Origin: Macrostomum hystrix
Taxonomy: Eukaryota > Animalia > Platyhelminthes
DNA length: 64,000 nt
Assembly: GCA_950097015.1 (NCBI GenBank)
Contig: CATNEN010000001.1
Location: 26,474,001-26,538,000, forward strand
Reading direction: 5' to 3'
In this document: positions 21,155-43,075 of the stretch, one piece after another
How the letters are laid out: the number at the start of each line of letters is the position of its first letter
Position numbering within the stretch: position 1 is the stretch's first letter
Position numbers and translations under genes: made by a program
The notes under the pieces: generated by a model
Seen by the model: only the letters and a program-made list of their open reading frames with translations
Told to the model about the DNA's origin: nothing
Databases searched by the model: none

Positions 21155-22915
21155 ATGAATTTCCTGCAGCTTGTTTTTCGGTTGCTTCTTTTGCTTCCGT
21201 TGTTACACGACAATGTTGCTTCTGGCATCCGGATCTGCAAATCCTTACATATAACCAGCTACGGCTATGAGACCCACAGAAATGTTAGTCGCTTGCAGGC
21301 GGACTTAACGGCTTTAGTAGCTGGCTGCCAGTATGTTTTCGGCAACGTGAAATTGAGCAATATAGGTATTGACGAATTAACATACGAACCGCTGGACGAT
21401 GAAATTCGAGACATGCAAACTGACTTTCTTGACTCCATTGTGGAGATTAGAGGAAAAATTGTGATCCGGTTCGTCAACCTTGAGCGCGTCACCTTCCGCA
21501 ACTTGCGCACCATCCGAGGTTCCGCTATTGAAAAATTTTCTGGCTACACATTTGGAATATTCAATTCGCCGAACTTGAGCAAGCTGGAATTGCCCAAGTT
21601 GACAGCTATCACAAAGCGAAATGTTTATACGATTGGGCTAGAAATTAAGTCTAGCTTGTACTGCTACCTGTCCTACAGTATCAACTGGAGAAGCCTGTTT
21701 CATGAACCACACCAGCGCTATTTTGATAAAGTGTTATCTGTTACTACTGGAGATGGCCAAAATGTTATGAAAAGCTCGAACTCGAGTGTGATTGATAGGC
21801 ATACCTGCAGTCGTCAGATTTCCTGTCACGCTAATTGTACTCGTAATCCAATTTATAACCAAACTTGCTGGTCCGACGGTGTTGATGGCTGCCAAAGTAA
21901 TCATCTGTGTCGTAAGCGCAAGTGTAAATTTACGAACCTATGCTTCCATAACCCGAGCACTGGCCAAGAAGACTGCTGCCACGACGACTGCCTTGGCGGA
22001 TGCTCAAACCGGCCCAACGAGTGCTTCGCCTGTCGGAGAGGAGTATTGTTCAATGGTGTCTGTAGAGAATCCTGTCCGTCGAATACTAGTACCGCTAGTG
22101 GTAATGGCACTGGCGTGACTGTTTGGCGACAGATCGGCAACATCTGCGTAGAGAAGTGCTCACTGCCCTTTGTTGTTAGCTCTGACGGCAGGCGCTGTTT
22201 AATCGAGTGTCCATCAGCAGAAGTCCCTATCAAAGGAGTTTGCACAAAGTGTATTGACAAAATTAGCTCTAAGCCCTGCAAATCGTGCAATGTCTTCTTT
22301 AGAATATCTAAAAAATTAGCATACTCATTGAGGACTGAGCAGTGTTCGATTTGGAGGGCCGATTCTTCTCTATACGTGTATGCTAGTGATCTAAGTAGCT
22401 TAGAATACCTTAGAGCATTCGAGAATTTAGAGTACTTTTACGGAAGTCTAATAATTGAGACATCTGCATACTTACCAGACAATCTCCGATTCCTACGTAA
22501 TATCAAATACGTCACTGATTCATTTGAGATTTTCTCGCTCAATACGAGATACCTCGGACTAGCTAGCTAACGGTCAATAGCTAGCTTGGAATATACTCGT
22601 GACCTTCAGCTTAGGAATATTAGTGATCTTTGCAGAGCCTGGTATCCAAGCAATCGAATCCGAGAAATCCAGGAAGTCACTAAAGAATTTCAAATTACAA
22701 TAGAAAACCTGAGCTTTGATGACAGCAGCGAGATTTGCCGGAACGCTACCTGCGATGCTCAGTGCCAGGACGAATGCTGGGGACCCGGTCCAGACATGTG
22801 CGTGGCGTGTCGGAACTTCAAAGTGAACGGCCGCTGCTATGCCACCTGTGCGGAGTCGGGCAGGATTGAAGTAAATGGGAATTGTGAACTGCCTGTGCCA
22901 CAGCTAATCGGCTAA
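21155..22915 (+). pseudogene. Secreted EGFR-ectodomain-like gene, copy 1 (premature stop at 22568-22570)
   Basis: Same architecture as copies 2 and 3. An 18-bp in-frame insertion introduces TAA in L2, giving a 471-aa product; the frame resumes at 22586. Confidence 0.88.
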
Positions 22916-25900
22916 TGCGATGAAGGCTGCAACGGTCCAGGGCGTGATCAGTGTGTGAACTGAGAAGTTTCGTTACGAACAAATCAGTGCTTCATTGTAA
23001 TGAGACTAAATTTGAGCTACTAATAGTAAACCAATATCCCTATGAAAATTCTAAGATGAAATTTGGAACAATTTGTTTGTCTTCAATTAGTCGATTAGCA
23101 CATGCAGTGGCACACCATCAAGGCAAGCCGTTGTGGCCATATTTGGTCACCTGAGTTTGACGTCGCCATTTGTTGAAGCCAGTCAGGAAAAGACCTTCAG
23201 CACTTGAGTGTTTTTAGTTTTCGATACCTAAATAAAAATAGACTCGTACTTCAAAATCAAATACTACTACTCACAGTAGTATTTGTCGTGCATGCACGAC
23301 ATGCACGCATGCACGTCCTTCATAAGCTTGTGCATTGCTGTAGCTGAGTAAATCATTTGCCTATCAAGTATTTAATCAACAAGGTGCTTTGTGGCTCGCA
23401 CTTTTACTCAGCAGCAGAGCTGCACAATGTCTACTCGATGTACTCGAATTAGGCGTTGAGTTGAAAAGTCAGGGTTTTGTGAAGAGTCTTACACGGGTAT
23501 AACTCCCTTGCTGCTTTTATTATATCCAGTTTAGTGTTGCTATCGGCATGCGTTTACTGGTGTTATTTTACGGAGCGTCACTTCTAGGCACTACAGACTC
23601 AAGGATGCTACTTTCTTTAGATTGTTCGCTCAAGCTAGTTTACAATATTAGATCTCGCTTCTCTGCGACTACTGGTCTGAGTACAGAGACAATTCAACTC
23701 AGGAACGAAATCTCAACTCGCGATAGCTCGAGCAAAGCTGTGAGCCATTTCTCTCGACTTAACTAAGGTATTTAACGGTTGAAAGGAGAGAAATGTGTCA
23801 AGCCAAACACGCGCGCACACACAATAGCTAAGGGCTACTGCGTGCATCCAATGATTGGATAGAGGTGCTGCACATATAAAATCCGATTTCGTCGTTAATG
23901 GACGTTTAATGGGCGCATTCTGAGCCACGAATCTATCGTCTATGGTTGGAAAATGCGAAGTCTTGAACCAGTGTGCCATATTATGGTCCCGAAAACGGGG
24001 CCCATTAAACCGTATAATGGGCGCCAAATAATGGGCCGCAAATCATTTATTGACGCGAAACGTTTCAAACATGTTTAAACAAGTAGAATAAGCGACAACT
24101 AAGTAGTTAATAGTCAGTGGCAGTAACGGTCAATACCCAGCGTGAGGTAAACATCGTTAGTCGAATTTGATCACGATCCTGCCACCCTCGATGACAAGAG
24201 ACTTGACCCCGTGGCCAGCAGTGGACTTACCGGAGTCCGCTTGATGGACCACTGACGTTCGTCAGACGACTGGAGTCCTGCAAAGCGTCAGAGGCAATCC
24301 TCGTAACCTTGGCCGATGGGCCTATTCTCATTCGAAATATTATGATCTCAAAATAAAAATTAATAATAATGATTGCTTCTCGATATTCGAGACACTTTTC
24401 TTAAGCTCTGAAAATAAAACAACGCTAGCAGCTACGCCTGCTCAATCAGTCCTCTTTTAGAATTTAATCGTAGATCGTATAACGCTTGAAGAAATGCTCG
24501 AAAAGAAGTTAAAAATTAAAACAAATGACGCATTTAGCTCGTAGCTATGCTCAACATTTTTTTTCTAGTTCTGATTCGGATAACGCTTGCAGTTATGTTG
24601 GATAATTTTTGTTAGCTTGGAATACAAAAAAATGCTAACAGCAACGTAAGCTCAGTCTTCACTTCTTTTTTAATCCTATTGAATATTGCTTGCATGAATG
24701 CTTAAAAACGCTGAAAGTTAAAAGGAACAATCGCATTGCTCAAAGTATTTTCTAATATTTCTGAATCAATAAACCATGGCAGATATGCTCGAAAATTCTT
24801 TCCTCAGTTTTGTAGCGAATAAAACTTGCTGCACTCAAATTTTTTGGGGGGGCGCCCACCCCCAGCCCGCTCCTTATCTGCCTGTCTGGCTTGGAGATCG
24901 GGCCACCTTCCGCCACTCCCCCTCTCCGCCGCTACCCACCTTCCCTCGCTCTCACCACTTCCGCCGCTCCACTCCTTAGCGTAGGGATTTTGCCTACGCT
25001 AGTTTGCCGGCATTTCTTTGTGTCCTGAACCCATTGTGCCACACCACCTAGCCTTCTAGTCTCAGTAGTGCACCGCCATACGATGACGCCACGCCCTAGC
25101 CACCGGCAACTCAGTCTCTATCATACTTACTTCATAATTGTTGCCCGCCGCGGTGCAAGAAGGGATTCAACCCTACGTGAAGACCCTGTTTTATTGTTAC
25201 TATTGTTGCTATATGTCGCTAATACCGAGCGAGTCTGTATGTACACCTATATCCTCTACGTCGCCAATAATAATACTCGTCATCATCTACTACAACCGTC
25301 ATTGCCCGAGTGCTACTGCTAGACAAATATTCGCCGTGTTTGTCGTTATTTATTCCACCTGGGTCCTCACCGAGAGCGTCACATTATTTCTTCGATAATT
25401 CGCTTTTACCATTTCGATAAATAATGTTACCCCCTCCATTATTTTTGCCAGCCACTTGATAAATTATTCTACCCCATTGATTATTTATACTCCACCTTGA
25501 TAATTTATGCTTTCCTCATGATAAATTTTGTTTACCTCTCGATAATTCATTCTCTCCCTCGATAATTCATGCTTCCCTGTTAATCTATCTACTGATTAGC
25601 TACTATCATATCTTTTCTATGGATAATTATGCTTTCTTCTTGATAGTAAATGTTTCCTCTTGGATAAATTATGCTTCCACATCGATTATTAATGCTATCT
25701 TTTGGAAATCTCATGCTTTCCCCCAGAAATATCATGCTTATCTTGCTAAACAACTCGTAAAAACGATACAATTGAAAAAGCTAAACGCTAATATTGCTGT
25801 GGTTTAAATGTTGCCTTATATTTCTAAATCTAATTACGCTTGCAGCAACGTGCGAAAAATCTGTCCTTAGTTTTATACTGAATAACGCCTTTTTACCGAA

Positions 25901-27379
25901 AGACTATATTTTTTCACTATATTATTACTCGTACCCAAAAGAGCTGAATAAAAATGTAAATAGAAAACAGTTACTGATAATTATGCATAACAATAATTAG
26001 CTACCCCTTGATAGATCATACTACCCCTCAATAATTCCTGCTAGTGTTGTAGTGCTGCTTTTTAATAGCACTTCCCTAGTAATTTAACTTCCTCTATTAG
26101 TAATGCATAATGCAAGTGGTTGGCTTAACCTCCTTATTTATTGTTTTCAGTCACTTAAAGTGACCTGTACAATCATTATACCGCACCCCTGTTGGGTGGA
26201 TTGATTCAAACTACTGAGATTTTGGGTAGCGTGGCTTTCAACACGATAGATCTGGCCTTCTGCCAGTAATGTTCTAGATACTAAATCTAGGTAATTCTGG
26301 AGACACTGCGGCTCTCAGGTGTTTCAGACAATTTAGTCAGATATTTCGGGCTCTCTGGCCAGTCTGTACTCGGGCTTCTCCCGGATCGGTTTTTAACGGT
26401 TTCCACTCACTTAGAAATAAGTAAGGCTTTTGAGTATGCTCACAAAGAGACAGAACTGTTTAAGCTCCAATTTAATGGCAGACCAAACGGTTAGCTTCCT
26501 GTATGAAAACCCCTCTGTATTTATACCAAAAATCCTATCGAATATTCCCAGTATATTTCAGTGGAGTAAAACAAAGTTTATGTATAGATATTTGTAGCAT
26601 ATAAAAAATATGCTACATATTTAGATGTTTTAACATGTTTTAACATGTTCTAACATGTTAAATGTTTAACATTTAACATGTTAGATGTTAAATTTATTTC
26701 GCGCGCTAGTTTAATTTGGCCAATGAGAGCCCTTTACACTATCCCTAAATAAATTATTCTATCCTTTTGAAAAAAGTGCTATACCCTGAAAGTATTATGT
26801 TATCCTAGAAATCTCATGCAATGTACATTAAGTTAGCACATTAAGTTAGCCATATATTAACGCACGTAGGGTGCTACAAGTAGTGACGCAATCCTATTCA
26901 ATTGAGAGCATCCGCCCTGTTCTGTGCTACTAACGCACGCACGGGCGAGAAAAAGCACAGATGCAATCTAATAAAGCTGACAGTGTCCGGCCCTATTCTA
27001 TACAGAAAAAACTGGGTCTATTGTATTCTGGATCTATTCTAACAGAAAATGACTGCTTTTTCGAATATTAAATGCCTTTAAAATTAGCAAATAATTCGAA
27101 AAACGTGTACCATCTCGTTAAGAAGGCAAATATTTTAGAGAAAGAATCGCGAAAATCGGACAACGTTTTTGCTAGAACAACGACAAGACCACATTTTACA
27201 TTGAGTGAATGGACACACACACTTTTAGCATAATAGAAGATAGAGAGTACAACATCCCTCCCAATAGCTCGTATTGGTTAACGACTGAGGAATAGAGAAT
27301 GATTAAAATAAGCATTTTGTTTCCACGCATGCGAAGCTCACAAAAGGTAACGTAGTTTGGCACGGGACACAAACTTAAA

Positions 27380-27912
27380 TGCAGTAGGTAAGTCAGATTG
27401 TCACAGTCAAGTCCTTGTTAGCGGTTCGCTTTACTTTGACACCGGATGCTGCCATCGACTGGCGTTCCGAACATCAGATCGGCGGCGGAGATTCCCGTGA
27501 CGGTGTGTGGCGTGTTGCTGTACACGGCGAGCCACTCTCGCAGCGCAGCTCGCCAATCAGTTTCTTGGGCTTCAGAAATGCAGAGCAGCTTGCTGAGGGA
27601 CCGATTTAGTTGCTCTGTAATGCCATTTAATTTGCAGTGGTATCGTCTGATGCGTAGATGGCTAATCCTGAGACTTTTGACAAAGCTGTTCAACACCTTT
27701 GATGCAAACAGTGGGCTGTTGTCGGATACAACCTGTCCTGCGGTTCCGAACGTTCCGAAGATCTGCTGCAGTTTTTTGATAGTGGCTTCTGCTGTCAGCG
27801 ATTTCCTGGCACAACGAATGGGTAGCGTTAGAAATGTTCGACAACTACCATGAAGTGCCGGCCGTTAATTGGCACGAGGAAGTCAAACCCGACGGTCTCT
27901 GGCGCTGAGTCT
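27380..27912 (-). pseudogene. LTR-retrotransposon integrase remnant
   Basis: TAEATIKKLQQIFGTFG...VVSDNSPLFAS...YHCKLNGITEQLNRSL is a degenerate rve core with frameshifts. Confidence 0.75.
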
Positions 27913-28255
27913 CTGGCCTTGACAGAAAAGCATGAGAAATGATACGCGGGAAAGGATGGAAGGAGAGCGTCGCGATGTTACAGATTTCGCGACACTCAGG
28001 AAATCCTACTCAGAAGTGCGGATATCCCTTTCGAATTTCCTTGTTCTCCATTGCCTACCCTAATAAGTCGTTGCGTTGCTTTAAGGCGAGGGACTCAGCC
28101 TTTTCACAATATTCAGCATCAGACCTTTGGTGCAGTGCTAGGGCTACCGCTGCATGGTCTCTATTAAAACTACTTAGTGGCTTTTAAAGGCCGATTGTAG
28201 GCACAATCGCGCTGCTATGCCGAGTGTTTTGAATGTCGTCCGTACTGCATTTCAG

Positions 28256-28528
28256 ACAACAAGACCTTCACAAAGACTGACAGGCCAACCAAGACAGTCA
28301 CCGCCACTGTTGCAACTAACTGGACTGTGTCCATTAGGAACGACCTCTTCTGTCTGGAGAAGTGCGCCAGCAGCCCCAGCTGCCAGGCTGTGATTTTCAA
28401 CGAACGGCAGCTGCTGTGCCACCTGCTCAGGTTTTTTTGAGTGCCACTCAAGCTCAAGAATTCTCCGAACAACTTACAACGCGGATCACAAAAATATCTG
28501 GAGAACTAAGGCAGGGACCACTGAGTAA
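28256..28528 (+). pseudogene. Orphan PAN/apple-domain exon
   Basis: Acceptor CTGCATTTCAG, phase 1; translates ..FCLEKCASSPSCQAVIFNERQLLCHLLRF, paralogous to 60354-60592. No upstream exon is visible. Confidence 0.7.
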
Positions 28529-29239
28529 ATCGCCAGGGGAAAAAGCATCCGAAATCTCACATTTTCTCGCAACCATTGCCGATCCAAACATTTCCTTCAC
28601 CTGCTACATATAGGTTAATATAAACGAAATGTCAAGATACGAGCGTAGGCCAAAGTTGAGTTACGAGTTACATAATTGACTGCTCATATATAGAAGTTAG
28701 CACATTAAAACGTATTTAAAACTAGTCTATTTAACTGCATATTATTTATACGCGGTTTTGAGGTCCTTAATGAAACAAAAAACTATTCTGTTATACTGCC
28801 AAACATGGAAAAACGAAGGTTAAGGGTCTCAAAATGTCCTGTTTGTTTCTAGATCAGAAATACTTGGCAGAATGTGATTTGTACAAAGTTAAAATCTGTT
28901 TCTTTACACGAAAACGTTACAAAACCAGAGTGATGCAGAACCGAGATTGAAACGCGAAATATTTCATATTTCCGTTTAACAATTCTTCTAGCTTGCTTAT
29001 ATGGTTTTTCGATTTCAATTTTTTCAGTTTTACTTCACTAGCTTCTGCGCCATAAAATTTATTATTCTACCAATATGACTCATGTAAACGAAAAAGTACT
29101 GTTGGGAACTGAACTGAATATTGCTTGTACTCTCTTGCTAGCAATTAGACTTTTCTTTTCTGCGTGGCCTTTAAGTGACAACCAGGCATCTATTGGATAA
29201 TTATCTGCATTGGATAATATTGGAAAATTACCTATTGCA

Positions 29240-30600
29240 GCTGCCGAAGACCGCGTACAACGTTCCAGCCCCCAGAACCTGCCGTCTATTGCCAGCACGA
29301 TCGCCATAGTCCCGAGGAGAGGTCCCCGCGGCGGGTGCCGATCGCCATTATCCTGAAGAAAGGCAAGAAATCCGATGAGATTGGCTTCTTCTGGTCGATT
29401 GCCCTGAACTCAAGGCTGGCTAAGCTAGCCGAGCGTTTGGTCCAAGCGTGGCTCTACGGGTGGGCCGAGTTCCAGCAACTGCGGCACACCTTTTACTTTT
29501 TACTTAATTGCAGGGGGCCTGGGGCACTTGACGCACAAGCGCAGGAACGACTAGGCGGGAGTCGCCCATCGCGCCATCTGCACCCCTGGACACAGGAACC
29601 TCACACAGCCGCAAGCCAAGTGGGGAAGGGGGCGGCAGCCGGAGTGCCACTATCTCACCACAGGCCCGCACACGCACAGAGCAGACCAAACCAGGGGAGG
29701 ACTTCGATGCCTGAAGGGTAGGGTCGAGAGGACCAAGCCACGCGCGCAGACGGCTGGTGAAACCTCGCCGCTCAGAGCACGCATGGCTGGTGCACACCCG
29801 CCCCACCCCCATACAACGCCTCACACCCGGCCCAACGCACAAACACAAACACAAACAAGCAGGCATGCAGAAGGCAGGGGTTAGGCTATTCTAAATTAGC
29901 TTTGGTTGCACAGAATAAGGTGCATCTCCGCAAGTCACTACTTCGCAAATCTCCAGCTAAGCCCCGAAATAATCGTGACTTGGAGGGAGGAACGAACCAG
30001 CGACCATTGGAAAGTGAGGCAGCGACATTAGCCGCTGACCCACTCACCCCCTCCTGCTGCACCCCACTCAGGCCGGTCGATGCGCAGCAGCAGATTGCCC
30101 GGCTTACTCAGCTCATCAGTGACGGCCACCAGAAGCCAGACGGATGGTTGCCGTCTTGTTTGAGTTCCGTAGACTGTCTAGAATCAGGGTCTGTTGCACA
30201 TGCTGCACGCCGCCTGGATCTGGCCGCGGGCGTTCGCTGGCAAACAAGCCTCTTGGCTGACCGACGAGCTGCTGTCAAGGCGCATGGCGCGCTGAGCAGC
30301 CCGGATCTTTCGCTAGGCCCTGCCGCAGTCGCGTTCTCGCCCCACTCCTCTTAGCGCTGAACATCAACGACCTACCCGGCTGCTGTCAGAGTACGTGTAT
30401 TCTGGATGAACTTTGCTTGACGCAGATGATCTCGCCGTCGCGGTGCAAGGCTTGACTCCGGAGGAGGCCGAGGCGAAAGCGCAGCGGGCAATTGACGCGG
30501 TCACCGCCTGAGAGAAGACTGGTTTATCTTTGGCTAAACGATATAACTTTCGCCTTGGACCGCCAGCAGCGCTTCCTCGGCATCATCCTGGATCACTGAA
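29240..30600 (+). pseudogene. Non-LTR retrotransposon RT remnant interrupted by a SINE
   Basis: ILKKGK..SIALNSRLAKLAERLVQAWL..LHPTQAG..QQIARLTQLISDG..ADDLAVAV, with stops and frameshifts. Confidence 0.75.
29491..30054 (-). mobile_element. tRNA-derived SINE (family 1)
   Basis: Homologous to 12552-13155; head has TGGGTCAGCGG and GGTTCGTTCC boxes; degenerate ~11-bp TSD TGCTGCAC(A/C)CC. Confidence 0.8.
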
Positions 30601-31333
30601 ATCGGGGTTTCCAGGCCTCTATCGGCGTCAATATTGCACCTGCCTGCGTTTTTTATACGAGATTGAGGAGAAGGCCGCTTACCTGTTTATTAACTAGCCT
30701 AGCTTACGAGCCCTGTCTCTTCACCTCCACAAAGAAGTGGGCTAACGTTACAGCCTGAGCAGATCTCGGATATCTCCTGCTGTTTCCTGTTGCGAACAGA
30801 GCGGTTGGGCGCTGGCCAGACATCCGTTCTGAGGAGAGAACGCTTGGGCGAAGCGCTCGCAGGCAGCTCGCTCAGCTGCGCAGCAGGCTGTCTCCCCTCC
30901 TAGCCGCCTGCATGGCCCGCACACACACACATACACACACACACAAACATTTTCAAACTCCTTCAGGAAGCAAAAATGATTCACTTAAATTTAGTCTTTC
31001 ACGCTTCTTTTACTGAGAATTGCCCGAGTTGGAGCACAGTTAACTCCTGGAATTTAAGAGACAAAAATAAAACAGGCCAAAGTCATTTGACTTGTGATTA
31101 TTGATTGATTTTTATACCTCGTTTTGAGAAAAATGTTTTGAGTAAGTTTTTCTGCAGAGTCAGAGAAACGGGCAAAATGTGGCAAGTGGTGTTCTTTTTT
31201 GCTGAATAATTTGCCTGCGAAAGAATTTTGTTTTCGACGAGTCGCATTTAATTCAATTGGTATTTAAAGAAGTGAAACCTTCAGAGCTGGGAATCAAAAT
31301 CGAAAGAAAGCACTACAGAGGTGATTTAAGAAA

Positions 31334-33082: not shown

Positions 33083-33803
33083 TGCGATGAAGGCTGCAAC
33101 GGTCCAGGGCGTGATCAGTGTGTGAACTGAGAAGTTTCGTTAAGAACAAATCAGTGCTTTATTGTAATGAGACTAAATTTGAGCTACTAAAGTAAACCAA
33201 GATCCCTATGAAAATTCTAAGATGAAATTTTGGAACAAGTTTTTGTCTTCAAATAGTCGATTAGCACATGCAGTGGCACACCATCAAGGCAAGCCGTTGT
33301 GGCCATATTTGGTCCCCTGAGTTTGACGTCGCCATTTGTTGAAGCCAGTCAGGAAAATTACTTCAGCACTTAAGTGCTTTTAGTTTTTGTATACCTAAAT
33401 AAAAATAGAAAATTGACTCAAACTCTAAAATCAAATACTACTACTCACAGTAGTATTTGTCGTGCATGCACAACATGCACGCATGCATGTCTTTCATAGG
33501 CTTGTTCAGTGCTCTAGCTGAGTAAATCATTTGCCTATTAAGCATTTAATCAACAAGGTGCTTTGTGACTCGCACTTGTACACAGCAGCAGAGCTGTACG
33601 ATGTCTACTCGATGTACTCAAAATAGGCGTTGAGTTGAAAAGTCAACGTTTTGTGAAGAGCCTACACAAGTACCCTTGCTGCTCTTATTATATCCGGTTT
33701 AGTATATATCGGCATGCGTTACTGGGGTTATTTTACGGAGCGTCACTTCTTGGCACTACAGACTCAAGGATGCTACTTTCTATAGATTGTTCGCTCAAGC
33801 TAG

Positions 33804-34613
33804 TGTGACAGTGTATATACGTTTTATCATTGCTCTTATTATAAAAAAGTAAAAATATAAAAAAATCAAAAACGCGCCAAAAATAAATATTTTGTTTATA
33901 TTCGTACCGTAATAAAAGTAATACTGTGTGTAAATAATTTTGTTTTAATTTGCATATTGTAAATAATATTATGTAAAATGTTTCCGTTCAAACAAAAGTT
34001 AATTTCTCTCACTATAAATAGCCGCGATTTTTACTAGGAAAAATATATCCGTTTTCGTTTCCATTTTCGTTTCGGTTCGTTGCGTGTCTAAAGTGCTCTG
34101 AAGTGTTTTCAAGAGTTTGTTGAAGTTTTCGAAGTGTTTCAAGAGTGTTTAAAGAGTGAAGTTGAAGTTAAAGGAGTTTTTAGTGTGTTTAGAAGTAGAG
34201 TTTCTAAGTGTGTTAAAAAGCAAATTCCGAACTTTAAAGTGTTGCATTGTGTTATTCATTTTAAGAAAAGATAGCAGTGAGAAATATAGTCAGAATTATA
34301 CTCAGAAATTATACTAAGAATATTACAGAAGGGAAACTGCTAAACTCTAATCTCGGGGACGCCTAATCGGCTGGAAACGTGTACAGTTGCCTAATTACCG
34401 CTCGTGCATATATAAACGCTACCATTTGAGAAGCTAAAACGGCCCTTTTGAGGACAGCCAGTTAAAATATCTATTAATTTGAGTCAACTGCAGTGGAATT
34501 AATAAATAGCCCTACGACAACTTTGGTGACAACGGTGAGATAGTTAATTTCCACCTGTACAACTTTGGTGGCATTCAATAAGAGTTAAGTATTGAGAAGT
34601 AAGCCCTAGAACA
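33804..34613. mobile_element. Solo LTR (810 bp)
   Basis: TGT..ACA termini with TSD CTAG. The empty site CAAGCTAGTTTAC is present in the paralogous unit at about 23631. Confidence 0.85.
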
Positions 34614-37600
34614 CTAGTTTACAATATTAGATCTCGCTTCTCTGCGACTACTGGTTTGAGTACAGAAAAATTCAACTCAGGAACGAAATCTCAACTCGCG
34701 ATAGCTCGAGCAAAGCTGTGAGCCATTTCTCTCGACTTAACTAAGGTATTTAACGGTTAAAAGCTGAGAATTGTGTCAAGCCAAACACGCGCGCACACAC
34801 AATAGCTAAGGGCTACTGCATGCATCCAATGATTGGATAGAGGTGCTGCAGATAATTACTTTGCTTCTTGCAAATATACGAAATACCATACTGCGATGTA
34901 AAAGTATCTCAGCAAATGCCCGTTCTAGGTCTAGCTTGATTACATCAGCCTGTGTTCGATGCACTTTGTTTTAATTCGAACAACAATTACACAAAAAACA
35001 AATGCTGCAGTGACTCGCACTTCGCACTCGACAATACTTCCTTGAGATGCGCCCGATAAAAAAGGCACAAAAATGCCTGACACTTTCGATACGACACAAT
35101 TGAAAAAATCGGTACGTAGATTAAATTATTAATGCTCCCCACTCGACAACTTAGGCAACCATTTTGATGTACAGTATGGTGTACATTCATGCTACATTTG
35201 ATGTACATTTACGCTACCGTCTCGATAAGTCATGTTTTCCTATCGATAACTCATGCTTTCCCCCTCAATAATTCGTGCTTCCCTCTCGACAGTTCATGCT
35301 TCTGACAATAAGTCATGCTACCCCTCCGATAAATCATGCTAGCCTCTTTAATTAATCATTCTGTAGTCTGAGAAACATTAACCCTGAAAGAATTATGCTA
35401 TTACCTGAAAATCTCATCCAATCTCATCAAGAAATCAAGACATTCCCTAGATATCTAATGCCTTTCTGCACAAATTCAATGCAATGCGCAAGATATATCA
35501 TGCTGCTATCCATTTATATCTAGCGCTGTGTGACGTTGTCACTTAGCGTGCGCATTCCCCCGTTCAATGTTCCACTGCACTTCCGTGTATAGTTGTATAT
35601 TTTGCTAGTTTTTCACTCTAAAGTTCTAATAATTAAAGTTTTTCTCTTTCTACTGTAAGTAAACGCCAACGAAGATCGCGCTGTCCCCAACTTGGTTTTG
35701 CTAGTGTCTCGATATTATTTACCCCAGCCAATGAGCGTGCGAGCTCTGTCGGGCTAGAATTATCGATCGCCCTGTTTTTTAGACTGTCTAGCTTATTTCT
35801 TGGAGATCGGGGCCACCTTCCGTCACTCCCCCCTTCCGCCGCTACCCACCTTCCCTCGCTCTCACCACTTCCGCCGCTCCACTCCTTAGCGTAGGGAGTT
35901 TGCCTACGCTAGTTTGCCGGCATTTCTTTGTGTCCTGAACCCATTGTGCCACGCCACCTAGCCTTCTAGTCTCAGTAGTGCACCGCCATACGATGACGCC
36001 ACGCCCTAGCCACCGGCAACTCAGTCTCTATCATACTTACTTCATAATTGTTGCCCGCCGCGGTGCAAGAAGGGATTCAACCCTACGTGAAGACCCTGTT
36101 CTATTGTTGCCATTGTTGCTATATGTCGCTAATACCGAGCGAGCCTGTATGTACACCTATATCCTCTACGTCGCCAATAATAATACTCGTCATCATCTAC
36201 TACAACCGTCATTGCCCGAGTGCTACTGCTAGACAAATATTCGCCGTGTTTGTCGTTATTTATTCCACCTGGGTCCACACCGAGAGCGTCACATTATTTC
36301 TTCGATAATTAGCTTTTACCATTTCGATAAATAATGTTACCCCCTCCATTATTTTTGCCAGCCACTTGATAAATTATTCTACCCCATTGATTATTTATAC
36401 TCCACCTTGATAATTTATGCTTTCCTCATGATAAATTTTGTTTACCTCTCGATAATTCATTCTCTCCCTCGATAATTCATGCTTCCCTGTTAATCTATCT
36501 ACTGATTAGCTACTATCATATCCTTTCTATGGATAATTAATGCTTCCTTCTTGATAGTAAATGTTTCCTCCTGGATAAATTATGCTTCCACATCGATTAT
36601 TAATGCTATCTTTTGGAAATCTCATGCTTTCCCCGAGAAATGTCATGCTTATCTTGCTAAACTAAAAACGATACAATTGAAAAAGCTAAACGCTAATATT
36701 GCTGTGGTTTAAATGTTGTCTTATATTTCTAAATCTAATTACGCTTGCAGCAACGTGCGAAAAATCTGTCCTTAGTTTTATACTGAATAACGCCTTTTTA
36801 CCGAAAGACTATTTTTTCACTATTTTAATACTCGTACCCAAAAGAGCTGAATAAAAATGTAAATAGAAAACAGTTACTGATAATTATGCATAACAATAAT
36901 TAGCTACCCCTTGATAGATCATACTACCCCTCAATAATTCCTGCTAGTGTTGTAGTGCTGCTTTTTAATAGCACTTCCCTAGTAATTTAACTTCCTCTAT
37001 TAGTAATGCATAATGCAAGTGGTTGGCTTAACTGTTGTAGTGCTGCTTTTTAATAGCACTTCCCTAGTAATTTAACTTCCTCTATTAGTAATGCATAATG
37101 CAAGTGGTTGGCTTAACCTCCTTATTTATTGTTTTCAGTCACTTAAAGTGACCTGTACAATCATTATGCCGCACCCCTGTTGGGTGGATTGATTCAAACT
37201 ACTGAGATTTTGGGTAGCGTGGCTTTCAACACGATAGATCTGGCCTTCTGCCAGTAATGTTCTAGATACTAAATCTAGGTAATTTTGGAGACACTGCTCT
37301 CAGGTGTTTCAGACAATTTAGTCAGATATTTCGGGCTCTCTGGCCAGTCTGTACTCGGGCTTCTCCCGGATCGGTTTTAACGGTTTCCACTCACTTAGAA
37401 ATAAGTAAGGCTTTTGAGTATGCTCACAAAGAGACTGAACTATTTAAGCTTCAATTTAATGGCAGACCAACGGTTAGCTTCCTGTATGAAAACCCCTCTG
37501 TATTTATACCAAAAATAAATCCTATCGAATATTCCCAGTATATTTCAGTGGAGTAAAACAAAGTTTATGTATAGATATTTCGTATAGTATTATGTTATCC

Positions 37601-38179
37601 TAGAAATCTCATGCAATGTACATTAAGTTAGCACATTAAGTTAGCCATATATTAACGCACGTAGGGTGCTACAAGTAGTGACGCAATCCTATTCAATTGA
37701 GAGCATCCGCCCTGTTCTGTGCTACTAACGCACGCACGGGCGAGAAAAAGCACAGATGCAATCTAATAAAGCTGACAGTGTCCGGCCCTATTCTACAGAA
37801 AAAACAGGGTCTATTGTATTCTGGATCTATTCTAACAGAAAATGACTGCTTTTTCGAACATTAAATGCCTTTAAAATTAGCAAATAATTCGAAAAACGTG
37901 TACCATCTCGTTAAGAAGGCAAATATTTTAGAGAAAGAATCGCGAAAATCGGACAACGCTTTTGCTAGAACAACGACAAGACCACATTTTACATTGAGTG
38001 AATGGACACACACACTTTTAGCATAATAGAAGATAGAGAGTACAACATCCCTCCCAATAGCTCGTATTGGTTAACGACTGAGGAATAGAGAATGATTAAA
38101 ATAAGCATTTTGTTTCCATGCATGCGAAGCTCACAAAAGGTAACGTAGTTTGGCACGGGACACAAACTTAAATGCAGTA

Positions 38180-38900
38180 GGTAAGTCAGATTGTCACAGT
38201 CAAGTCCTTGTTAGCGGTTCGCTTTACTTTGACACCGCGGATGCTGCCATCGACTGGCGTTCCGAACATCAGATCGGCGGCGGAGGTTCCAGTGACGGTG
38301 TGTGGCGTGTTGCTGTACACGGCGAGTCACTCTCGCAGCGCAGCTCGCCAATCAGTTTCTTGGGCTTCAGAAATGCAGAGCAGCTTGCTGAGGGGCCGAT
38401 TTAGTTGCTCTGTAATGCCATTTAATTTGCCGTGGTATCGTCTGATGCGTAGATGGCTAATCCTGAGACTTTTGACAAAGCTGTTCAACACCTTTGATGC
38501 AAACAGTGGGCTGTTGTCGGATACAACCTGTCTAGCGGTTCCGAACGTTCCGAAGATCTGCTGCAGTTTTTTGATAGTGGCTTCTGCTGTCATTGATTTC
38601 CTGGCACAAAGAATGGGTAGCGTTAGAAATGTTCGACAACTACCATGAAGTGCCGGCTGTTAGTTGGCGCGAGGAAGTCAAACCCGACGGTCTCTGGCGC
38701 TGAGTCTGGCGCAGGAGCTTTTTCATGACTTGCAGACTTTGCCTTCAGCCGCATCGAAGTTTCTGTGCCCAATTCACCGCATCGATAGCATGGCATCGGT
38801 CTGTCATGCTGCTCGCTCCCTGCTCGAAGCAGATGATTGATGAAATCCTTGCGGCTTGTTCCGCATGGCTGTTGACTGATAGCTGGCAGCTTCAAAGGCT
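38180..38900 (-). pseudogene. LTR-retrotransposon integrase remnant (duplicate of 27380-27912, longer)
   Basis: Same degenerate rve core, plus upstream sequence containing CYRC. Confidence 0.72.
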
Positions 38901-39704
38901 CGGGTCAGCTGAAGGGCTTGCTGGAGGCCGATGCAATTTTCTTTAGTGCTATTGTTTTATGCAACGTAAGGCAGGGACCACTGAGGAAATCGCCAGGGGA
39001 AAAAGCGTCCGAAATCTCACATTTTCTCGCACCCATTGCCGATCAAAATATTTCCTTCACCTGCTACAGATAGGTTAATATCAACGAAATGTCAAGATAC
39101 GAGCGAAGGACAAAGTTGAGTTACGAGTTACATAATTGACTGCTCATATATAGAAGTTAGCACATTAAAACGTATTTAGAACTAATCTACAAGTATTTAA
39201 CTGCATATTATTTATACACGGTTTTGAGGTCCTTAATAAAACAAAAAACTATTCTGTTATACTGCCAAACATGGAAAAACGAAGGTTAAGCGTCTAAAAA
39301 TGTCCTGTTTGTTTCTAGATCAGAGATACTTGGCAGAATGTGATTTGTACAAAGTTAAAATCTGTTTCTTTACACGAAAACGTTACAAAACCAGAGTGAT
39401 GCAGAACCGAGATTGAAACGCGAAATATTTCATATTTCCGTTTAACAATTCTTCTAGCTTGCTTATATGGTTTTTCGATTTCAATTTTTTCAGTTTTACT
39501 TCACTAGCTTCTGCGCCATAAAATTTATTATTCTACCAGTATGACTCATGTAAACGAAAAAGTATTGTTAAGAACTGAACTGAATATTGCTTGTACTCTC
39601 TTGCTAGCAATTAGACTTTTCTTTTCTGCGTGGCCACTAAGTGACAACCAGGCATCTATTGGATAATTATCTGCATTGGATAATATTGGAAAATTACCTA
39701 TTGC

Positions 39705-40490
39705 AGCTGCCGAAGACCGCGTACAACGTTCCAGCCCCCAGAACCTGCCGTCTATTGCCAGCACGATCGCCATAGTCCCGAGGAGAGGTCCCCGCGGCGT
39801 GTGCCGATCGCCATTATCCTGAATAAAGGCAAGACATCCGATGAGATTGGCTTCTTCTGGTCGATTGCCCTGAACTCAAGGCTGGTTTGGTCCAAGCGTG
39901 GCTCTATGGGTGGACCGAGTTCCAGCAACTGCTGCACACCTTTTACTTTTTACTTAATTGCAGGGGGCCTGGGGCACTTGACGCACAAGCGCAGGAACGA
40001 CTAGGCGGGAGTCGCCCATCGCGCCATCTGGACCCCTGGACACATGCACCTCACACACAACCGCAAGCCAAGCGGGGAAGGGGGCGGCAGCCGGAGTGCC
40101 TCTATCTCACCCAAGGCCCGCACACGCACAGAGCAGATCAAACCAGGGAGGACAAACAAACGGTGGCCGTCTTGTTTGAGTTCCGTAGACTGTATAGAAT
40201 CAGGGCCTGTTGCACATCCTGCACGCCGCCTGGATCCGGCCGCGGGCGTTCGCTGGCAAACAAGCCTCTTGGCTGACCGACGAGCTGCTGTCAAGGCGCA
40301 TGGCGCGCTGAGCAGCTGCCGGATCTTTCGCGACGTCCTGCCGCAGTCGCGTTCTCGCCCCACTCCCCTTTGCGCTGAACATCAACGACCTTCCCGGCTG
40401 CTGTCAGAGTACGTGTATTCTAAATGAACGTTGCTTGACGCAGACGATCTCGCCGTCGCGGCGCTTCCTCGGCATCATCCTGGATCACTG
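39705..40490 (+). pseudogene. Non-LTR RT remnant with truncated SINE (39941-40152), duplicate
   Basis: Collinear with 29240-30600 but with additional deletions. Confidence 0.7.
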
Positions 40491-40801
40491 AAATCGGGGT
40501 TTCCAGGCCTCTATCGGCGTCAATATTGCACCTGCCTGCGGTTTTTTATACGAGATTGAGGAGAAGGCCGCTTACCTGTTTAATAACTAGCCTAGCTTAC
40601 TAGCCCTGTCTCTTCACCTCCACAAAGAAGTGGGCTAACGTTACAACCTGAGCAGATCTCGGATATCTCCTGCTTTTTCCTGTGGCGAACAGAGCGGTTG
40701 GGCGCTGGCCAGACATCCGTTCTGAGCAGAGAAAGCTTGGGCGAAGCGCTCAGCTGCGCAGCGGGCTGTCTCCCCTCCTAGCCGGCTGCATGGCCCGCAC
40801 G

Positions 40802-40853
<52 letters not shown>

Positions 40854-41314
40854 CACAAACATTTTCAAACTCCTTCAGGAAGACCACGATGTCTTTAAAT
40901 GCTTCTAATGCTATTCATAGAACGGTGAGCCTACATTTTCTTATTAGAAAAACAAAAAAGCTTCACTTTAATTTAGTCTTTCACGCTTCTTTTACTGGGA
41001 ATTGCCCGAGTTGGAGCACAGTTAATTCCTGGAATTTAAGAGACAAAAATAAAACAAGCCAAAGTCATTTGACTTGTGATTATTGATTGATTTTTATACC
41101 TCGTTTTGAGAAAAATGTTTTGAGTAAGTTTTTCTGCAGAGTCAGAGAAACGGGCAAAATGTGGCAAGTGGTGTTTTTTTTGTTGAAAAAATTGCCTGCG
41201 AAAGAATTTTGTTTTCGACGAGTCGTATTTAATTCAATTGGTATTTAAAGAAGTGAAACCTTCAGAGCTGGGAATCAAAATCGAAAGAAAGCACTACAGA
41301 GGTGATTTAAGAAA

Positions 41315-43075
41315 ATGAATTTCCTGCAGCTTGTTTTTCGGTTGCTTCTTTTGCTTCCGTTGTTACACGACAATGTTGCTTCTGGCATCCGGATCTGCAA
41401 ATCCTTACATATAACCAGCAAGGGCTATGAGACCCACAGAAATGTTAGTCGCTTGCAGGCGGACTTAACGGCTTTAGTAGCTGGCTGCCAGTATGTTCAC
41501 GGCGACGTGACATTGGACAGAATAGGCTTTAGCGAATTCACAAACAAACAGCTTGGCGATGAAATTCGAGGCATGCAAACTGACTTTCTTGACTCCATTG
41601 TGGAGATCAGAGGAAAACTAGTGATCGAGCAAGTCAACCTTAAGCGCGTCACCTTCCGTAACTTGCGCACCATCCGAGGTTATGCTTTTAATGAATCTAC
41701 TGACTTCCCATTATATTCATTTGTATTATTCTTTTCGCGGTACATGAGGAAGCTGGAATTGCCCAAGCTGACTGCAATCACAAAGAAAAATGTATATCTA
41801 TTGGGGCCAATGCAGTCTAGCTTGTACTGCTACCTGTCCTACAGCATCAACTGGAGAAGCCTGTTTCAAGAACCAGGCCAGCGTTATTTTGATAACATAT
41901 TTTCTGTTATTACAGAAGAAGGCCCAGATCTTTTGAGACGCTGGAGCTCACATGTGATAAGGCATACCTGCAATCGTCTGCTTTCCTGTCACGCCAATTG
42001 TACTCAAACTCCAATTTATAACCAAACTTGCTGGTCCGACGGTGTCGATGGCTGCCAAAGTAATCATCTGTGTCGTAAGCGCAAGTGTAAATTTACGAAC
42101 CTATGCTTCCATAACCCGAACACTGGCCAAGAAGACTGCTGCCACGACGACTGCCTTGGCGGTTGCTCAAACCGGCCCAACGAGTGCTTCGCCTGTCGGA
42201 GAGGAGTATTGTTCAATGGTGTCTGTAGAGAATCCTGTCCGTCGAATACTAGTACCGCTAGTGGCAATGGCACTGGCGTGACTGTTTGGCGACAGATCGG
42301 CAACATCTGCGTAGAGGAGTGCTCACTGCCCTTTGTTGTTAGCTCTGACGGCAGGCGCTGTTTAATCGAGTGTCCATCAGCAGAAGTCCCTATCAAAGGA
42401 GTTTGCACAAAGTGTATTGACAAAATTAGCTCTAAGCCCTGCAAATCGTGCAATGTCTTCTTTAGAATAACAAAAAAATTAGCATACTCATTGAGGACTG
42501 AGCAGTGTTCGATTTGGAGGGCCGATTCTTCTGATCTAGTCGTGTATGTTGATTGGTTAAGTAGCTTAGATAACCTGAAAGTATTGGAGAATTTAGAGTA
42601 CTTTTACGGCAATTTAATAATTCGGACATATGATATATACGAGCCGTACTTACTAGACAATCTCCGATTCCTACGTAATATCAAACTCGTCACGGACTCC
42701 TTTAAGATTTTCTCGCTCAAGACGAGATACCTCGGACTAGCTAGCTTGGAATATACTGCTGACCTTCTGCTTAGGAATATTAGTGATCTTTGCAGAGCCT
42801 GGTATCCTAGCAATCGAATCCGAGAAATCCAGGAAGTCACTAAAGAATTTCAAATTACAGTAGAAAACCTGAGCTTTGATGACAGCAGCGAGATTTGCCG
42901 GAACGCTACCTGCGATGCTCAGTGCCAGGACGAATGCTGGGGACCCGGCCCAGACATGTGCGTGGCGTGTCGGAACTTCAAAGTGAACGACCGCTGCTAT
43001 GCCACCTGTGCGGAGTCGGGCAGGATTGAAGTAAATGGGAATTGTGAACTGCCTGTGCCACAGCTAATCGGCTAA
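41315..43075 (+). CDS. Secreted EGFR-ectodomain-like protein, copy 3 (586 aa, intronless)
   Basis: Same architecture as copy 2. The first ~380 aa are identical to copy 2 and L2 is a patchwork of copy 1-like and copy 2-like segments. Confidence 0.92.
   Translation: MNFLQLVFRLLLLLPLLHDNVASGIRICKSLHITSKGYETHRNVSRLQADLTALVAGCQYVHGDVTLDRIGFSEFTNKQLGDEIRGMQTDFLDSIVEIRGKLVIEQVNLKRVTFRNLRTIRGYAFNESTDFPLYSFVLFFSRYMRKLELPKLTAITKKNVYLLGPMQSSLYCYLSYSINWRSLFQEPGQRYFDNIFSVITEEGPDLLRRWSSHVIRHTCNRLLSCHANCTQTPIYNQTCWSDGVDGCQSNHLCRKRKCKFTNLCFHNPNTGQEDCCHDDCLGGCSNRPNECFACRRGVLFNGVCRESCPSNTSTASGNGTGVTVWRQIGNICVEECSLPFVVSSDGRRCLIECPSAEVPIKGVCTKCIDKISSKPCKSCNVFFRITKKLAYSLRTEQCSIWRADSSDLVVYVDWLSSLDNLKVLENLEYFYGNLIIRTYDIYEPYLLDNLRFLRNIKLVTDSFKIFSLKTRYLGLASLEYTADLLLRNISDLCRAWYPSNRIREIQEVTKEFQITVENLSFDDSSEICRNATCDAQCQDECWGPGPDMCVACRNFKVNDRCYATCAESGRIEVNGNCELPVPQLIG

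What the first reader, a model, noticed from the sequence alone, without database searches (positions are those of the whole stretch)
21155..43075. Tandem array of intronless, secreted EGFR-ectodomain proteins: candidate diversifying decoy or recognition system
Seen: three ~1.75-kb single-exon ORFs about 10 kb apart encode signal peptide, L1, furin-like, L2 and partial domain IV, then stop. No TM helix or tyrosine kinase occurs anywhere in the repeat unit, and AATAAA lies about 315 bp after each stop. Known: EGFR genes are normally multi-exon membrane kinases; soluble or kinase-less L-domain proteins exist (Drosophila SDR, nematode irld genes) and some act as ligand sinks. Inference: this is a dedicated, amplified family of soluble L-domain binders, possibly of retrogene origin, acting as growth-factor traps or repurposed as variable recognition molecules.
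Basis: partly seen in the sequence, partly recalled or inferred. Interest (0 to 1): 0.85.

Follow-up and report, generated by a model that had tools for sequence, protein, structure and literature searches.

The report
Secreted EGF-receptor ectodomain gene family
A free-living flatworm (Macrostomum hystrix by assembly size) carries about 21 copies of a gene for a secreted, kinase-less EGF-receptor ectodomain whose predicted ligand-binding faces are hypervariable, suggesting a repertoire of soluble binders rather than signalling receptors.

Summary
The window carries 2.3 head-to-tail ~10-kb duplication units. Each has an intronless gene encoding signal peptide, L1, furin-like CR1, L2 and the first modules of domain IV, then TAA, with AATAAA 316 nt later. 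Copies 2 and 3 are intact. Copy 1 has an in-frame TAA from an 18-bp insertion and a mutated TATA box.

The genome fits Macrostomum hystrix. It holds about 21 such genes, 17 intact, all sharing the same stop. In-frame fossil domain-IV codons follow the stop, so a nonsense mutation created the soluble form. Its nearest relatives are intronless full-length EGFR-type kinases. Canonical EGFRs here are also single-ORF, and duplication is DNA-level, so a retrogene origin is not supported.

No TM or kinase exon lies in the 64 kb. Contigs from public runs (probably RNA) cover only ORF plus 3'UTR and run unspliced through the stop.

The cysteine-rich scaffold is under purifying selection (dN/dS 0.3-0.4). 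About 60 L1/L2 codons are hypervariable (dN/dS ~2.3) and coincide with EGF-contact positions of human EGFR (p=2.4e-4). Patches are shuffled between copies by gene conversion.

Function is inferred: a diversified set of soluble binders. First-stage readers of this scan noted the same family in two other windows of this genome.

The parts
20809..30950 (+). Tandem duplication unit 1 (~10.1 kb)
   Evidence: Self-BLAST: 20809-23639 matches 31002-33804 at 89% and 40984-43604 at 91%. 24890-30949 matches 35799-40827 at 92-98%.
30968..40949 (+). Tandem duplication unit 2
   Evidence: 30968-33618 matches 40950-43604 at 95.9%.
40950..43988 (+). Partial unit 3 (the array ends here)
   Evidence: Self-BLAST; no further homology after 43988.
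21155..22915 (+). Copy 1: gene disabled by an in-frame TAA at 22568-22570, inside an 18-bp insertion at about 22560-22581. The TATA-like box is mutated (TACTTAAA). The rest of the frame is intact.
31334..33082 (+). Copy 2: intact 582-aa secreted EGFR-ectodomain gene
41315..43075 (+). Copy 3: intact 586-aa gene. Residues by domain: SP 1-23, L1 24-228, CR1 229-384, L2 385-530, partial CR2 531-586.
41384..41998 (+). L1 domain of copy 3, with hypervariable rung positions (e.g. residues 66-77, 103-106, 126-140, 159-165, 205-214)
42467..42904 (+). L2 domain of copy 3. It is a mosaic of copy-1-like and copy-2-like patches. Hypervariable residues: 404-414, 435-438, 458-467, 482-488, 517.
43076..43183 (+). 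Fossil of domain IV after the stop, in the same frame: CDEGCNGPGRDQCVN-TGA-EVSLRTNQCF... The equivalent stretches start at 22916 and 33083.
   Evidence: Aligns with ...SECDGGCSGPSASECERC... of the full-length paralogue. Shared by all 17 intact copies, with frame-breaking indels in two.
43391..43396 (+). AATAAA poly(A) signal, 316 nt after the stop (also at 23231 and 33398)
   Evidence: Laid contigs end at about 43360-43490.
41242..41249 (+). TATTTAAA box 73 nt upstream of the ATG (also at 31261-31268). Conserved upstream of most family members.

Best explanation
These genes belong to a lineage-specific family of about 21 genes in a Macrostomum flatworm. Each encodes a secreted fragment of an EGFR-type receptor: signal peptide, L1, CR1, L2 and the first one to two modules of domain IV.

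Shown:
- The family descends from intronless full-length EGFR-type kinase genes.
- A Glu-to-stop (GAA to TAA) change in domain IV cut off the rest of domain IV, the TM helix and the kinase. The downstream codons survive as an in-frame fossil.
- The family then expanded by DNA-level tandem duplication.

Inferred:
- The protein folds as an extended L1-CR1-L2 clamp.
- It lacks the distal domain-IV loop that tethers and auto-inhibits vertebrate EGFR. It should therefore be a constitutively open, soluble binding module.
- It binds its partners through the same L1 and L2 faces that EGFR uses for EGF.

Those faces, and little else, are diversified. Nonsynonymous change exceeds synonymous change at about 60 codons, and short gene-conversion tracts shuffle the patches between copies.

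Most likely role (inferred): a repertoire of soluble binders with different specificities, engaged with fast-evolving partners. Candidate partners are diversifying ligands, non-self molecules, or mating-partner molecules. A single growth-factor sink is less likely.
For: - Architecture and fold: Pfam. PDB sequence matches to LET-23 and Drosophila EGFR. AF2 model with pLDDT 84.5 and pTM 0.76. Foldseek top hits are Drosophila EGFR ectodomains, and extended HER2-like forms fit better (TM 0.52-0.61) than tethered EGFR (TM 0.36-0.39).
- No TM or kinase.
- Family census and shared stop.
- Fossil domain IV.
- Parentage: the soluble clade has 100/100 support. It is sister (94/91) to M. lignano PAA79361 plus the contig-9 kinases. 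The AU test rejects a post-speciation origin (p=0.0019).
- Constraint: dN/dS is 0.42 in CR1 and 0.31 in CR2, and 38 of 39 Cys columns are invariant.
- Diversification: 60 hypervariable codons have dN 0.72 and dS 0.32. Adjacent codons have dS 0.25 and dN/dS 0.57.
- Location of variation: 8 of 12 mapped EGF-contact positions (contact list from PMC8838133) fall in the top 15% of L-domain variability, permutation p=2.4e-4.
- Mosaicism: copies 2 and 3 differ at 0/612 nt in L1 but 48/426 nt in L2. The PHI-like test gave 0 of 2000 permutations as low as observed.
- Expression: contigs of four public runs cover only 41340-43490 and run colinear through the stop. No joint to other exons was seen.
Against: - No binding partner, tissue or phenotype is known.
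- The runs are only guessed to be RNA, and their contigs cannot be assigned to individual copies.
- The hypervariable codons were chosen by amino-acid variability, so their dN/dS is inflated by construction.
- dS is also heterogeneous (0.03 to 0.43). Part of the pattern therefore reflects gene conversion homogenising the scaffold rather than selection alone.
- The N-terminal EGF-contact segment (EGFR 14-18) does not map to variable sites.
- The signal peptide was judged by eye, not by SignalP.
Confidence: 0.6

Rival explanations
1. The proteins are plain decoys or modulators of the worm's own EGF signalling. They would sequester endogenous EGF-like ligands, as nematode HPA-1/HPA-2, Drosophila SDR (for insulin-like peptides) and vertebrate soluble ErbB isoforms do. 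Copy number would serve dosage.
For: The ectodomain is complete through L2, as in ligand-binding soluble EGFR fragments. The ligand-contact faces are where change happens. Kinase-less L-domain modulators are known: IRLD, HPA-1 and HPA-2 (PMC9262388).
Against: A sink for conserved endogenous ligands should keep its binding residues. Here the contact-equivalent positions are the most variable in the protein, with up to 9 different residues at the Q384 equivalent and dN above dS. No EGF-motif ORF lies in the window.
Confidence: 0.22
2. The proteins are dominant-negative partners. They would heterodimerise with the full-length kinase paralogues through the invariant CR1 arm region and silence them. 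L-domain variation would then be a by-product of relaxed constraint.
For: CR1, including the loop that aligns with the EGFR dimerisation arm (residues 309-332), is almost invariant across the 17 copies.
Against: Relaxed constraint predicts dN/dS of about 1 spread over the L domains. It does not predict dN/dS of about 2.3 on periodic contact-face positions flanked by codons at 0.57. The arm-like loop differs from that of the contig-9 kinases.
Confidence: 0.1
3. The array is decaying: non-functional relics of a truncated receptor, kept similar by gene conversion.
For: Copy 1 and about 4 other members are broken. Overall dN/dS is 0.82.
Against: 17 of about 22 copies keep 572-586-codon ORFs at a mean dS of about 0.14. 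38 of 39 Cys columns are invariant. CR1 and CR2 have dN/dS of 0.3-0.4. The TATA box and AATAAA are conserved. Transcript-like contigs are deep.
Confidence: 0.05

Closest known systems
EGFR/ErbB receptor tyrosine kinases (C. elegans LET-23, Drosophila EGFR, human EGFR/HER2-4)
   Same: The domain order L1-CR1-L2-CR2 is the same. The best sequence matches in the PDB are LET-23 (E 3e-22) and Drosophila EGFR. The best fold matches are Drosophila EGFR 3LTF and 3I2T. The variable sites sit at EGF-contact positions.
   Different: There is no distal domain IV, TM helix, kinase or tail. The protein ends at about the equivalent of human EGFR residue 540, before the 561-585 tether loop (numbering via P0035 and 1MOX). 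There are about 21 paralogues with hypervariable binding faces.
Macrostomum intronless EGFR-type kinases (M. lignano PAA79361/A0A267G008; M. hystrix contig-9 cluster, L021-L024, L031)
   Same: They are 47-49% identical over the whole ectodomain, intronless and tandemly clustered. They are the sister clade in the tree.
   Different: They are full-length (1067-1090 aa), with a complete domain IV, a TM helix and a Tyr-kinase domain.
C. elegans IRLD family (insulin/EGF-receptor L-domain proteins, including HPA-1 and HPA-2)
   Same: It is an expanded, clustered family of kinase-less L-domain proteins. Some members lie in hyper-divergent regions, and HPA-1 and HPA-2 modify EGF signalling (PMC9262388).
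   Different: The origin is independent: the flatworm family branches inside Macrostomum EGFR paralogues. From my own knowledge, IRLDs show only weak homology to the receptors and are mostly membrane-anchored. The flatworm proteins retain a complete EGFR-type L1-CR1-L2 and are predicted to be secreted.
Engineered or natural soluble EGFR ectodomains (sEGFR501, soluble ErbB isoforms); Drosophila SDR
   Same: The protein is truncated after L2 and the first domain-IV module(s). From my own knowledge of the EGFR literature, such fragments bind ligand without the domain II-IV tether. sEGFR501 is cited as a reagent in PMC11400634.
   Different: Those are single products, made by alternative processing or in the laboratory. 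This is a germline-encoded multigene family with diversified binding faces.
Diversified recognition families built on solenoid or repeat scaffolds (lamprey VLRs, plant NLR LRRs) and gene-conversion-shuffled families
   Same: A conserved scaffold carries hypervariable residues at the same position on successive beta-solenoid rungs. Patches are exchanged between tandem copies.
   Different: No somatic assembly is implied and no immune role is shown. The scaffold is an EGFR L domain, which is not known in that role.

Membership tests
EGFR/ErbB family (ectodomain homology) | L1, furin-like CR1, L2 and CR2 in that order | tested here: met
   Pfam. Colinear LET-23 alignment, query 45-578 to LET-23 27-542. 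Foldseek to 3LTF and 3I2T at E 1e-21. CR2 is present only for its first ~55 residues.
EGFR/ErbB family (receptor tyrosine kinase) | Single-pass TM helix and cytoplasmic Tyr-kinase domain | tested here: not met
   The ORF stops in domain IV. There is no KD19 window above 1.0, no kinase or TM match in 64 kb, and contigs run unspliced through the stop.
Kinase-less L-domain modulators (IRLD/HPA, SDR, soluble ErbB) | Receptor L domain(s) without a kinase | tested here: met
Kinase-less L-domain modulators (IRLD/HPA, SDR, soluble ErbB) | Common descent with IRLD or SDR | tested here: not met
   The family is nested among Macrostomum EGFR paralogues, so its origin is independent.
Kinase-less L-domain modulators (IRLD/HPA, SDR, soluble ErbB) | Sequesters the receptor's ligand | not testable with these tools
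   Needs binding assays.
Retrogene (processed copy) | Intronless copy of an intron-bearing parent | tested here: not met
   The parent-like kinases (L021-24, L030-32) and the canonical EGFRs (L035-37) are themselves single ORFs of 1050-1573 aa.
Retrogene (processed copy) | Homology limited to the mRNA, with a poly(A) remnant | tested here: not met
   Copies share the promoter, more than 300 nt of 5' flank, sequence beyond AATAAA and the whole 10-kb unit. No A-tract follows the 3' end.
Diversifying-selection recognition family | Variation concentrated on the binding surface of a conserved scaffold | tested here: met
   Mean entropy at EGF-contact equivalents is 1.56 against 0.69 for the L domains, p=2.4e-4. 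CR1 and CR2 are nearly invariant.
Diversifying-selection recognition family | dN above dS at the variable sites | tested here: inconclusive
   dN/dS is 2.27 at 60 sites against 0.57 at adjacent codons, and 20-codon windows reach 3.6. However, sites were picked by variability, recombination is rife, and no likelihood site model was run.
Diversifying-selection recognition family | Demonstrated binding of varied targets | not testable with these tools
   Needs experiments.

The most novel reading that the evidence does not exclude
A flatworm has turned the EGF-receptor ligand-binding clamp into a germline-diversified repertoire of secreted recognition proteins. The binding faces are hypervariable and shuffled by patchwise gene conversion, and the proteins act in immunity or in sexual conflict (M. 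hystrix inseminates hypodermically). This would be a new scaffold for variable recognition molecules, alongside LRR-based VLRs, FREPs and Dscam.
Probability: 0.3. Interest if true: 0.85.

Novelty: new variant of a known kind. Interest (0 to 1): 0.68.

Why it matters
Kinase-less L-domain proteins are known as ligand sinks. This family differs in several ways taken together:
- It is a large, tandemly amplified family.
- The complete EGFR binding clamp is kept.
- The EGF-contact positions themselves are hypervariable and are exchanged between copies.

That combination is the signature of an arms race, not of housekeeping signalling.

The family also offers an unusually clean record of how a soluble receptor is born. 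There is one nonsense codon, and the old reading frame is still legible behind it.

Macrostomum is a tractable model with RNAi, in situ hybridisation and positional RNA-seq. The question of what these proteins bind is therefore directly testable. No protein more than 50% identical was found among 1.84 billion cluster representatives, so the family appears undescribed.

Tried and rejected
- The search for homologous proteins with copy 3 gave nothing at E<=1e-5. Its length window excludes the 1090-aa relatives, so this says little.
- Pfam does not call L2. An L2-only profile gave only weak PDB hits, and HMMER aligned it to L1 of ErbB4 one rung out of register. I relied instead on whole-protein alignments and on the fold.
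- I looked for TM or kinase exons in the window by tblastn and found none.
- I looked for an EGF-motif ORF in the window as a possible linked ligand and found none.
- ORFs in the intergenic part of the repeat unit have no Pfam match.
- Retrogene origin was rejected (see membership test).
- The TAA being read through or recoded was rejected. A TGA follows 15 codons later, more stops follow that, and two copies carry frame-breaking indels in the fossil.
- The supplementary expression tables of PMC10468722 are held. They could not be linked to these genes without the annotation's gene IDs, so I did not read them.
- My first contact-site mapping used a wrong offset. It was corrected.
- My first PHI-like script overflowed. 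It was rerun.
The intron status and neighbourhood of the M. lignano relatives could therefore not be checked.
- The AF2 model's coordinates are not exposed, so solvent exposure of the variable sites could not be computed.
Full report
**1. The observation**

The ORF listing finds ORFs at 21155-22570 (471 aa), 31334-33082 (582 aa) and 41315-43075 (586 aa), all on the + strand and all beginning MNFLQLVFRLLLLLPLLHDNVASG.

Pfam places three domains:
- Recep_L_domain at residues 57-183.
- Furin-like at 227-376.
- The first 38 positions of GF_recep_IV at 528-568, at 27.7-28.4 bits, just under the 29.5 cut-off.

Self-BLAST shows 2.3 head-to-tail units of about 10 kb: 20809-30950, 30968-40949 and 40950-43988, at 89-98% identity.

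A three-way alignment explains the short first ORF. An 18-bp insertion at about 22560-22581 carries an in-frame TAA at 22568-22570. After it the frame runs on intact to the family's normal stop at 22913-22915. Copy 1 also has TACTTAAA where copies 2 and 3 have TATTTAAA, 73 nt before the ATG. Copy 1 is therefore probably a recent pseudogene.

AATAAA lies 316 nt after each stop. No 19-residue window after the signal peptide exceeds a Kyte-Doolittle mean of 1.0. The TM helices of paralogues score 2.7-3.1 on the same scale. tblastn with a full-length paralogue finds only the three ectodomains in the 64 kb, with no TM or kinase sequence.

**2. Whose genome**

The assembly has 220,453,370 bases in 42 contigs. 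That matches the published Macrostomum hystrix assembly (~220 Mb, 42 contigs; PMC10468722). The nearest proteins among 1.84 billion cluster representatives are two M. lignano 'receptor protein-tyrosine kinases'. They are PAA79361 (48% identity) and PAA65671 (35%). Nothing else scores below 1e-30. The species assignment is an inference from these two facts.

**3. The family and its relatives**

A six-frame search of the whole genome, ORF extraction and a search with the 3' end plus UTR give about 21 members:
- 17 have intact ORFs of 572-586 codons, 78-95% identical to copy 3. They lie in clusters on contig 1 (24.55-27.38 Mb), contig 15 and contig 39.
- The window's copy 1 is broken as described above.
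- About four more are broken.

Sixteen of the 17 intact ORFs end ...CEL(P/H)(V/A)PQ(L/I)IG-TAA; L017 ends ...CELRHS at a TAA eight bases earlier. The family TAA and the fossil behind it are present in all 17.

At 36-49% identity the genome also holds other relatives:
- Intronless full-length receptors with a Tyr-kinase domain, on contig 9 (a tandem cluster) and contig 41. Their ORFs are 1050-1112 aa.
- Three 692-749-aa genes on contig 3 that keep all of domain IV and a TM helix but have no kinase.

The canonical EGFRs of this genome (1347-1573 aa) are also single ORFs. Being intronless is therefore the norm for this gene family in this animal.

**4. How the soluble form arose**

Directly after the TAA, in the same frame, the DNA reads CDEGCNGPGRDQCVN-TGA-EVSLRTNQCF... 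The full-length paralogue reads ...SECDGGCSGPSASECERCRKLKEDDKCV... at that point.
- The TAA sits where the kinase gene has Glu (GAA).
- The TGA sits where it has Cys.
- Nucleotide identity to the kinase gene is 62% in the fossil and 67% in the coding part of domain IV (small numbers).
- The fossil is present in all 17 intact copies, but two of them carry frame-breaking indels in it. It is therefore not translated sequence.

Copies share their promoter region, their flanks and the entire 10-kb unit, and no A-tract follows the 3' end. Amplification was by DNA-level duplication. The 'retrogene' idea is not supported.

In the maximum-likelihood tree the soluble genes form one clade (100/100) on a long stem of 0.73. 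That clade is sister (94/91) to a clade made of M. lignano PAA79361, the contig-9 kinases and the contig-3 genes. An AU test rejects grouping the soluble genes with the M. hystrix kinases to the exclusion of the M. lignano protein (p=0.0019).

The lineage is therefore older than the split of the two species, while the crown is young (mean dS about 0.14). The still-legible fossil suggests that the truncation came late on the stem; this step is inference.

The contig-3 TM-only genes nest inside the contig-9 kinases (100/96). That is a second, independent loss of the kinase.

**5. Expression and the 3' end**

One run search returned eight public runs from two studies. None is on record as RNA; the tool guesses RNA for four of them.

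Contigs of four runs were laid on 39500-45000:
- They cover only 41340-43490, that is the ORF and 3'UTR, at word depths of tens to hundreds.
- They leave 40052-41339 and 43548-45000 empty, apart from traces.
- Several contigs (42778-43165, 42787-43205, 42809-43087) run colinear through the stop and the fossil.
- The only joint (41689 to 41804, ends AA..TG) is not intron-like and matches a paralogue indel.

This pattern is what transcripts would give and what genomic DNA would not. It shows no splicing from domain IV to other exons. It is not proof of transcription. Contigs also cannot be assigned to single copies.

**6. Fold**

An AlphaFold2 model of copy 3, built with a 38-row alignment, has mean pLDDT 84.5 and pTM 0.76. 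Foldseek's best PDB matches are the Drosophila EGFR ectodomain, with and without Spitz (3LTF and 3I2T, E about 1e-21, TM 0.61-0.68). Extended forms (HER2, liganded EGFR) fit at TM 0.52-0.61, while tethered EGFR, HER3 and HER4 fit at 0.33-0.39.

I placed the C-terminus on human numbering by alignment to a vertebrate EGFR homologue (P0035). Its numbering was checked against the 1MOX alignment. By this route the protein ends near the equivalent of human EGFR residue 540. From my own knowledge of the EGFR literature, the domain-IV residues that form the auto-inhibitory tether lie at about 561-585. If so, the tether cannot form. That conclusion is inference.

**7. Where the copies differ**

In the 17-copy alignment, variation is patchy and periodic in L1 and L2 and nearly absent in CR1 and CR2. 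38 of 39 Cys columns are invariant.

Pooled Nei-Gojobori dN/dS by region:

| Region | dN/dS |
|---|---|
| Signal peptide | 0.62 |
| L1 | 0.91 |
| CR1 | 0.42 |
| L2 | 1.07 |
| CR2 | 0.31 |

Twenty-codon windows reach 3.6 and 3.3 in L2.

The 60 L-domain codons with entropy of at least 1.5 bits have dN 0.72 and dS 0.32 (dN/dS 2.27). The codons immediately next to them have a similar dS (0.25) but dN/dS of 0.57. The site choice is circular for dN, but the local dS control shows that the excess is not just mutation or age.

I took the EGF-contact residues of human EGFR from PMC8838133 and mapped them through the alignment:

| Human EGFR | Copy 3 |
|---|---|
| Y45 | R69 |
| L69 | Q106 |
| E90 | E127 |
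| L98 | F139 |
| V350 | D413 |
| L382 | I435 |
| Q384 | R437 |
| I438 | L485 |

All eight fall in the top 15% of L-domain variability. Mean entropy at the 12 mappable contact sites is 1.56 bits, against 0.69 for the L domains (permutation p=2.4e-4). L69, E90 and L98 are confirmed by HMMER's own alignment to 1MOX. The EGFR 14-18 segment does not map to variable sites.

**8. How the variation is moved around**

Copies 2 and 3 differ at 0 of 612 nt in L1 and 3 of 468 in CR1, but at 48 of 426 in L2. There, copy 3 alternates between copy-1-like and copy-2-like stretches of 40-150 bp.

Across the family:
- 35% of informative site pairs fail the four-gamete test.
- Neighbouring sites are less incompatible than shuffled ones (0.309 against 0.347; 0 of 2000 permutations as low).
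- Of the 17 copies, 13 have a different nearest relative in L1 and in L2.
- Synonymous divergence ranges from 0.03 (CR2 and the fossil) to 0.43 (L1 patches).

Short-tract gene conversion both homogenises the scaffold and reshuffles the variable patches.

**9. Reading**

Shown:
- A real, amplified family that is constrained in its scaffold.
- The products are predicted secreted, kinase-less EGFR ectodomains.
- The family was born by a nonsense mutation.
- Variation is concentrated at positions homologous to EGF contacts.
- Patches are exchanged between copies.

Inferred:
- The proteins are secreted binders that use the EGFR binding mode.
- The repertoire tracks fast-evolving partners.

A plain sink for conserved endogenous ligands fits less well, because the contact positions are the least conserved. 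A role as a dominant-negative dimer partner, or decay, fits worse still (see rivals). Which partners are bound (endogenous diversifying ligands, microbes, or molecules received at hypodermic insemination) cannot be decided here.

**10. Comparison and novelty**

The closest analogues in kind are the C. elegans IRLD family (68 genes; HPA-1 and HPA-2 modify EGF signalling; PMC9262388), Drosophila SDR and soluble ErbB isoforms.

The flatworm family arose independently, from Macrostomum EGFR paralogues. It keeps the complete L1-CR1-L2 clamp, and it combines tandem amplification with hypervariable contact faces. No protein more than 50% identical exists among 1.84 billion representatives. I rate it a new variant of a known kind.

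First-stage readers of this scan noted the same family in two other windows of this genome, and noted the fossil, the mosaic copy 3 and the hypervariable faces in this window. I tested those three claims here and they hold.

**Limits**

- No SignalP or TM predictor was available.
- The runs' organisms are coded.

The LTR element next to the array was only described.

Noticed in passing
window 16295-20276 (-): An LTR retroelement with 151-bp terminal repeats that are 100% identical (16295-16445 and 20126-20276) and one 1178-aa ORF. Pfam order along the ORF is SCAN-like gag, aspartyl protease, integrase (H2C2 + rve), then only the C-terminal part of RT, then RNase H. That order is unusual for a Gypsy-type element and suggests a rearranged copy. 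Described only.
   Followed up: partly
window 53230-58896 (+): Three consecutive GC-rich ORFs (361, 286 and 1135 aa) with weak P-loop STAND NTPase hits (AAA_22, AAA_16, nSTAND1) and an NWD1-like winged-helix domain (E 3e-13). This is probably one NLR/NWD1-like STAND gene about 10 kb downstream of the array. The 1135-aa part has no Pfam match.
   Followed up: partly
window 1-7338: A large inverted duplication (1-1562 against 3154-4714, and 3164-5061 against 5086-7338, 99% identical) carrying Pif1-helicase 2B-domain fragments. This is Helitron-like debris.
   Followed up: partly
window 7477-9260 and 9263-10940: Two adjacent satellite arrays (periods of about 18 bp and about 23 or 46 bp by the self-match offsets). 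The 251-aa ORF with a 'hexapeptide repeat' Pfam hit at 8551-9306 is an artefact of translating the 18-bp repeat.
   Followed up: partly
G000 contig 3, 4.45-4.81 Mb (L025-L027): Three intronless 692-749-aa paralogues keep the whole ectodomain, including domain IV, and a TM helix, but have only a ~10-residue tail and no kinase. In the tree they nest inside the contig-9 kinase genes, so this is a second, independent kinase loss. It gives membrane-anchored decoy-like receptors.
   Followed up: partly
G000 contig 9, 1.03-1.09 Mb (L021-L024, L030, L031): A tandem cluster of at least five intronless full-length EGFR-type kinase genes (1050-1087 aa), plus two 837-aa open frames. The canonical EGFRs on contigs 1, 25 and 38 are also single ORFs of 1347-1573 aa.
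   Followed up: partly
window 49635-51017 (-): A reverse-transcriptase fragment (RVT_1, C-terminal part only) in a GC-rich block (48-52 kb, GC 0.52-0.59), between the array and the STAND gene.
   Followed up: no
window 12681-13155 and 29586-30054: A 475-bp repeat (93% identical) shared between the region upstream of the array and the intergenic part of unit 1. It is probably a dispersed repeat.
   Followed up: no
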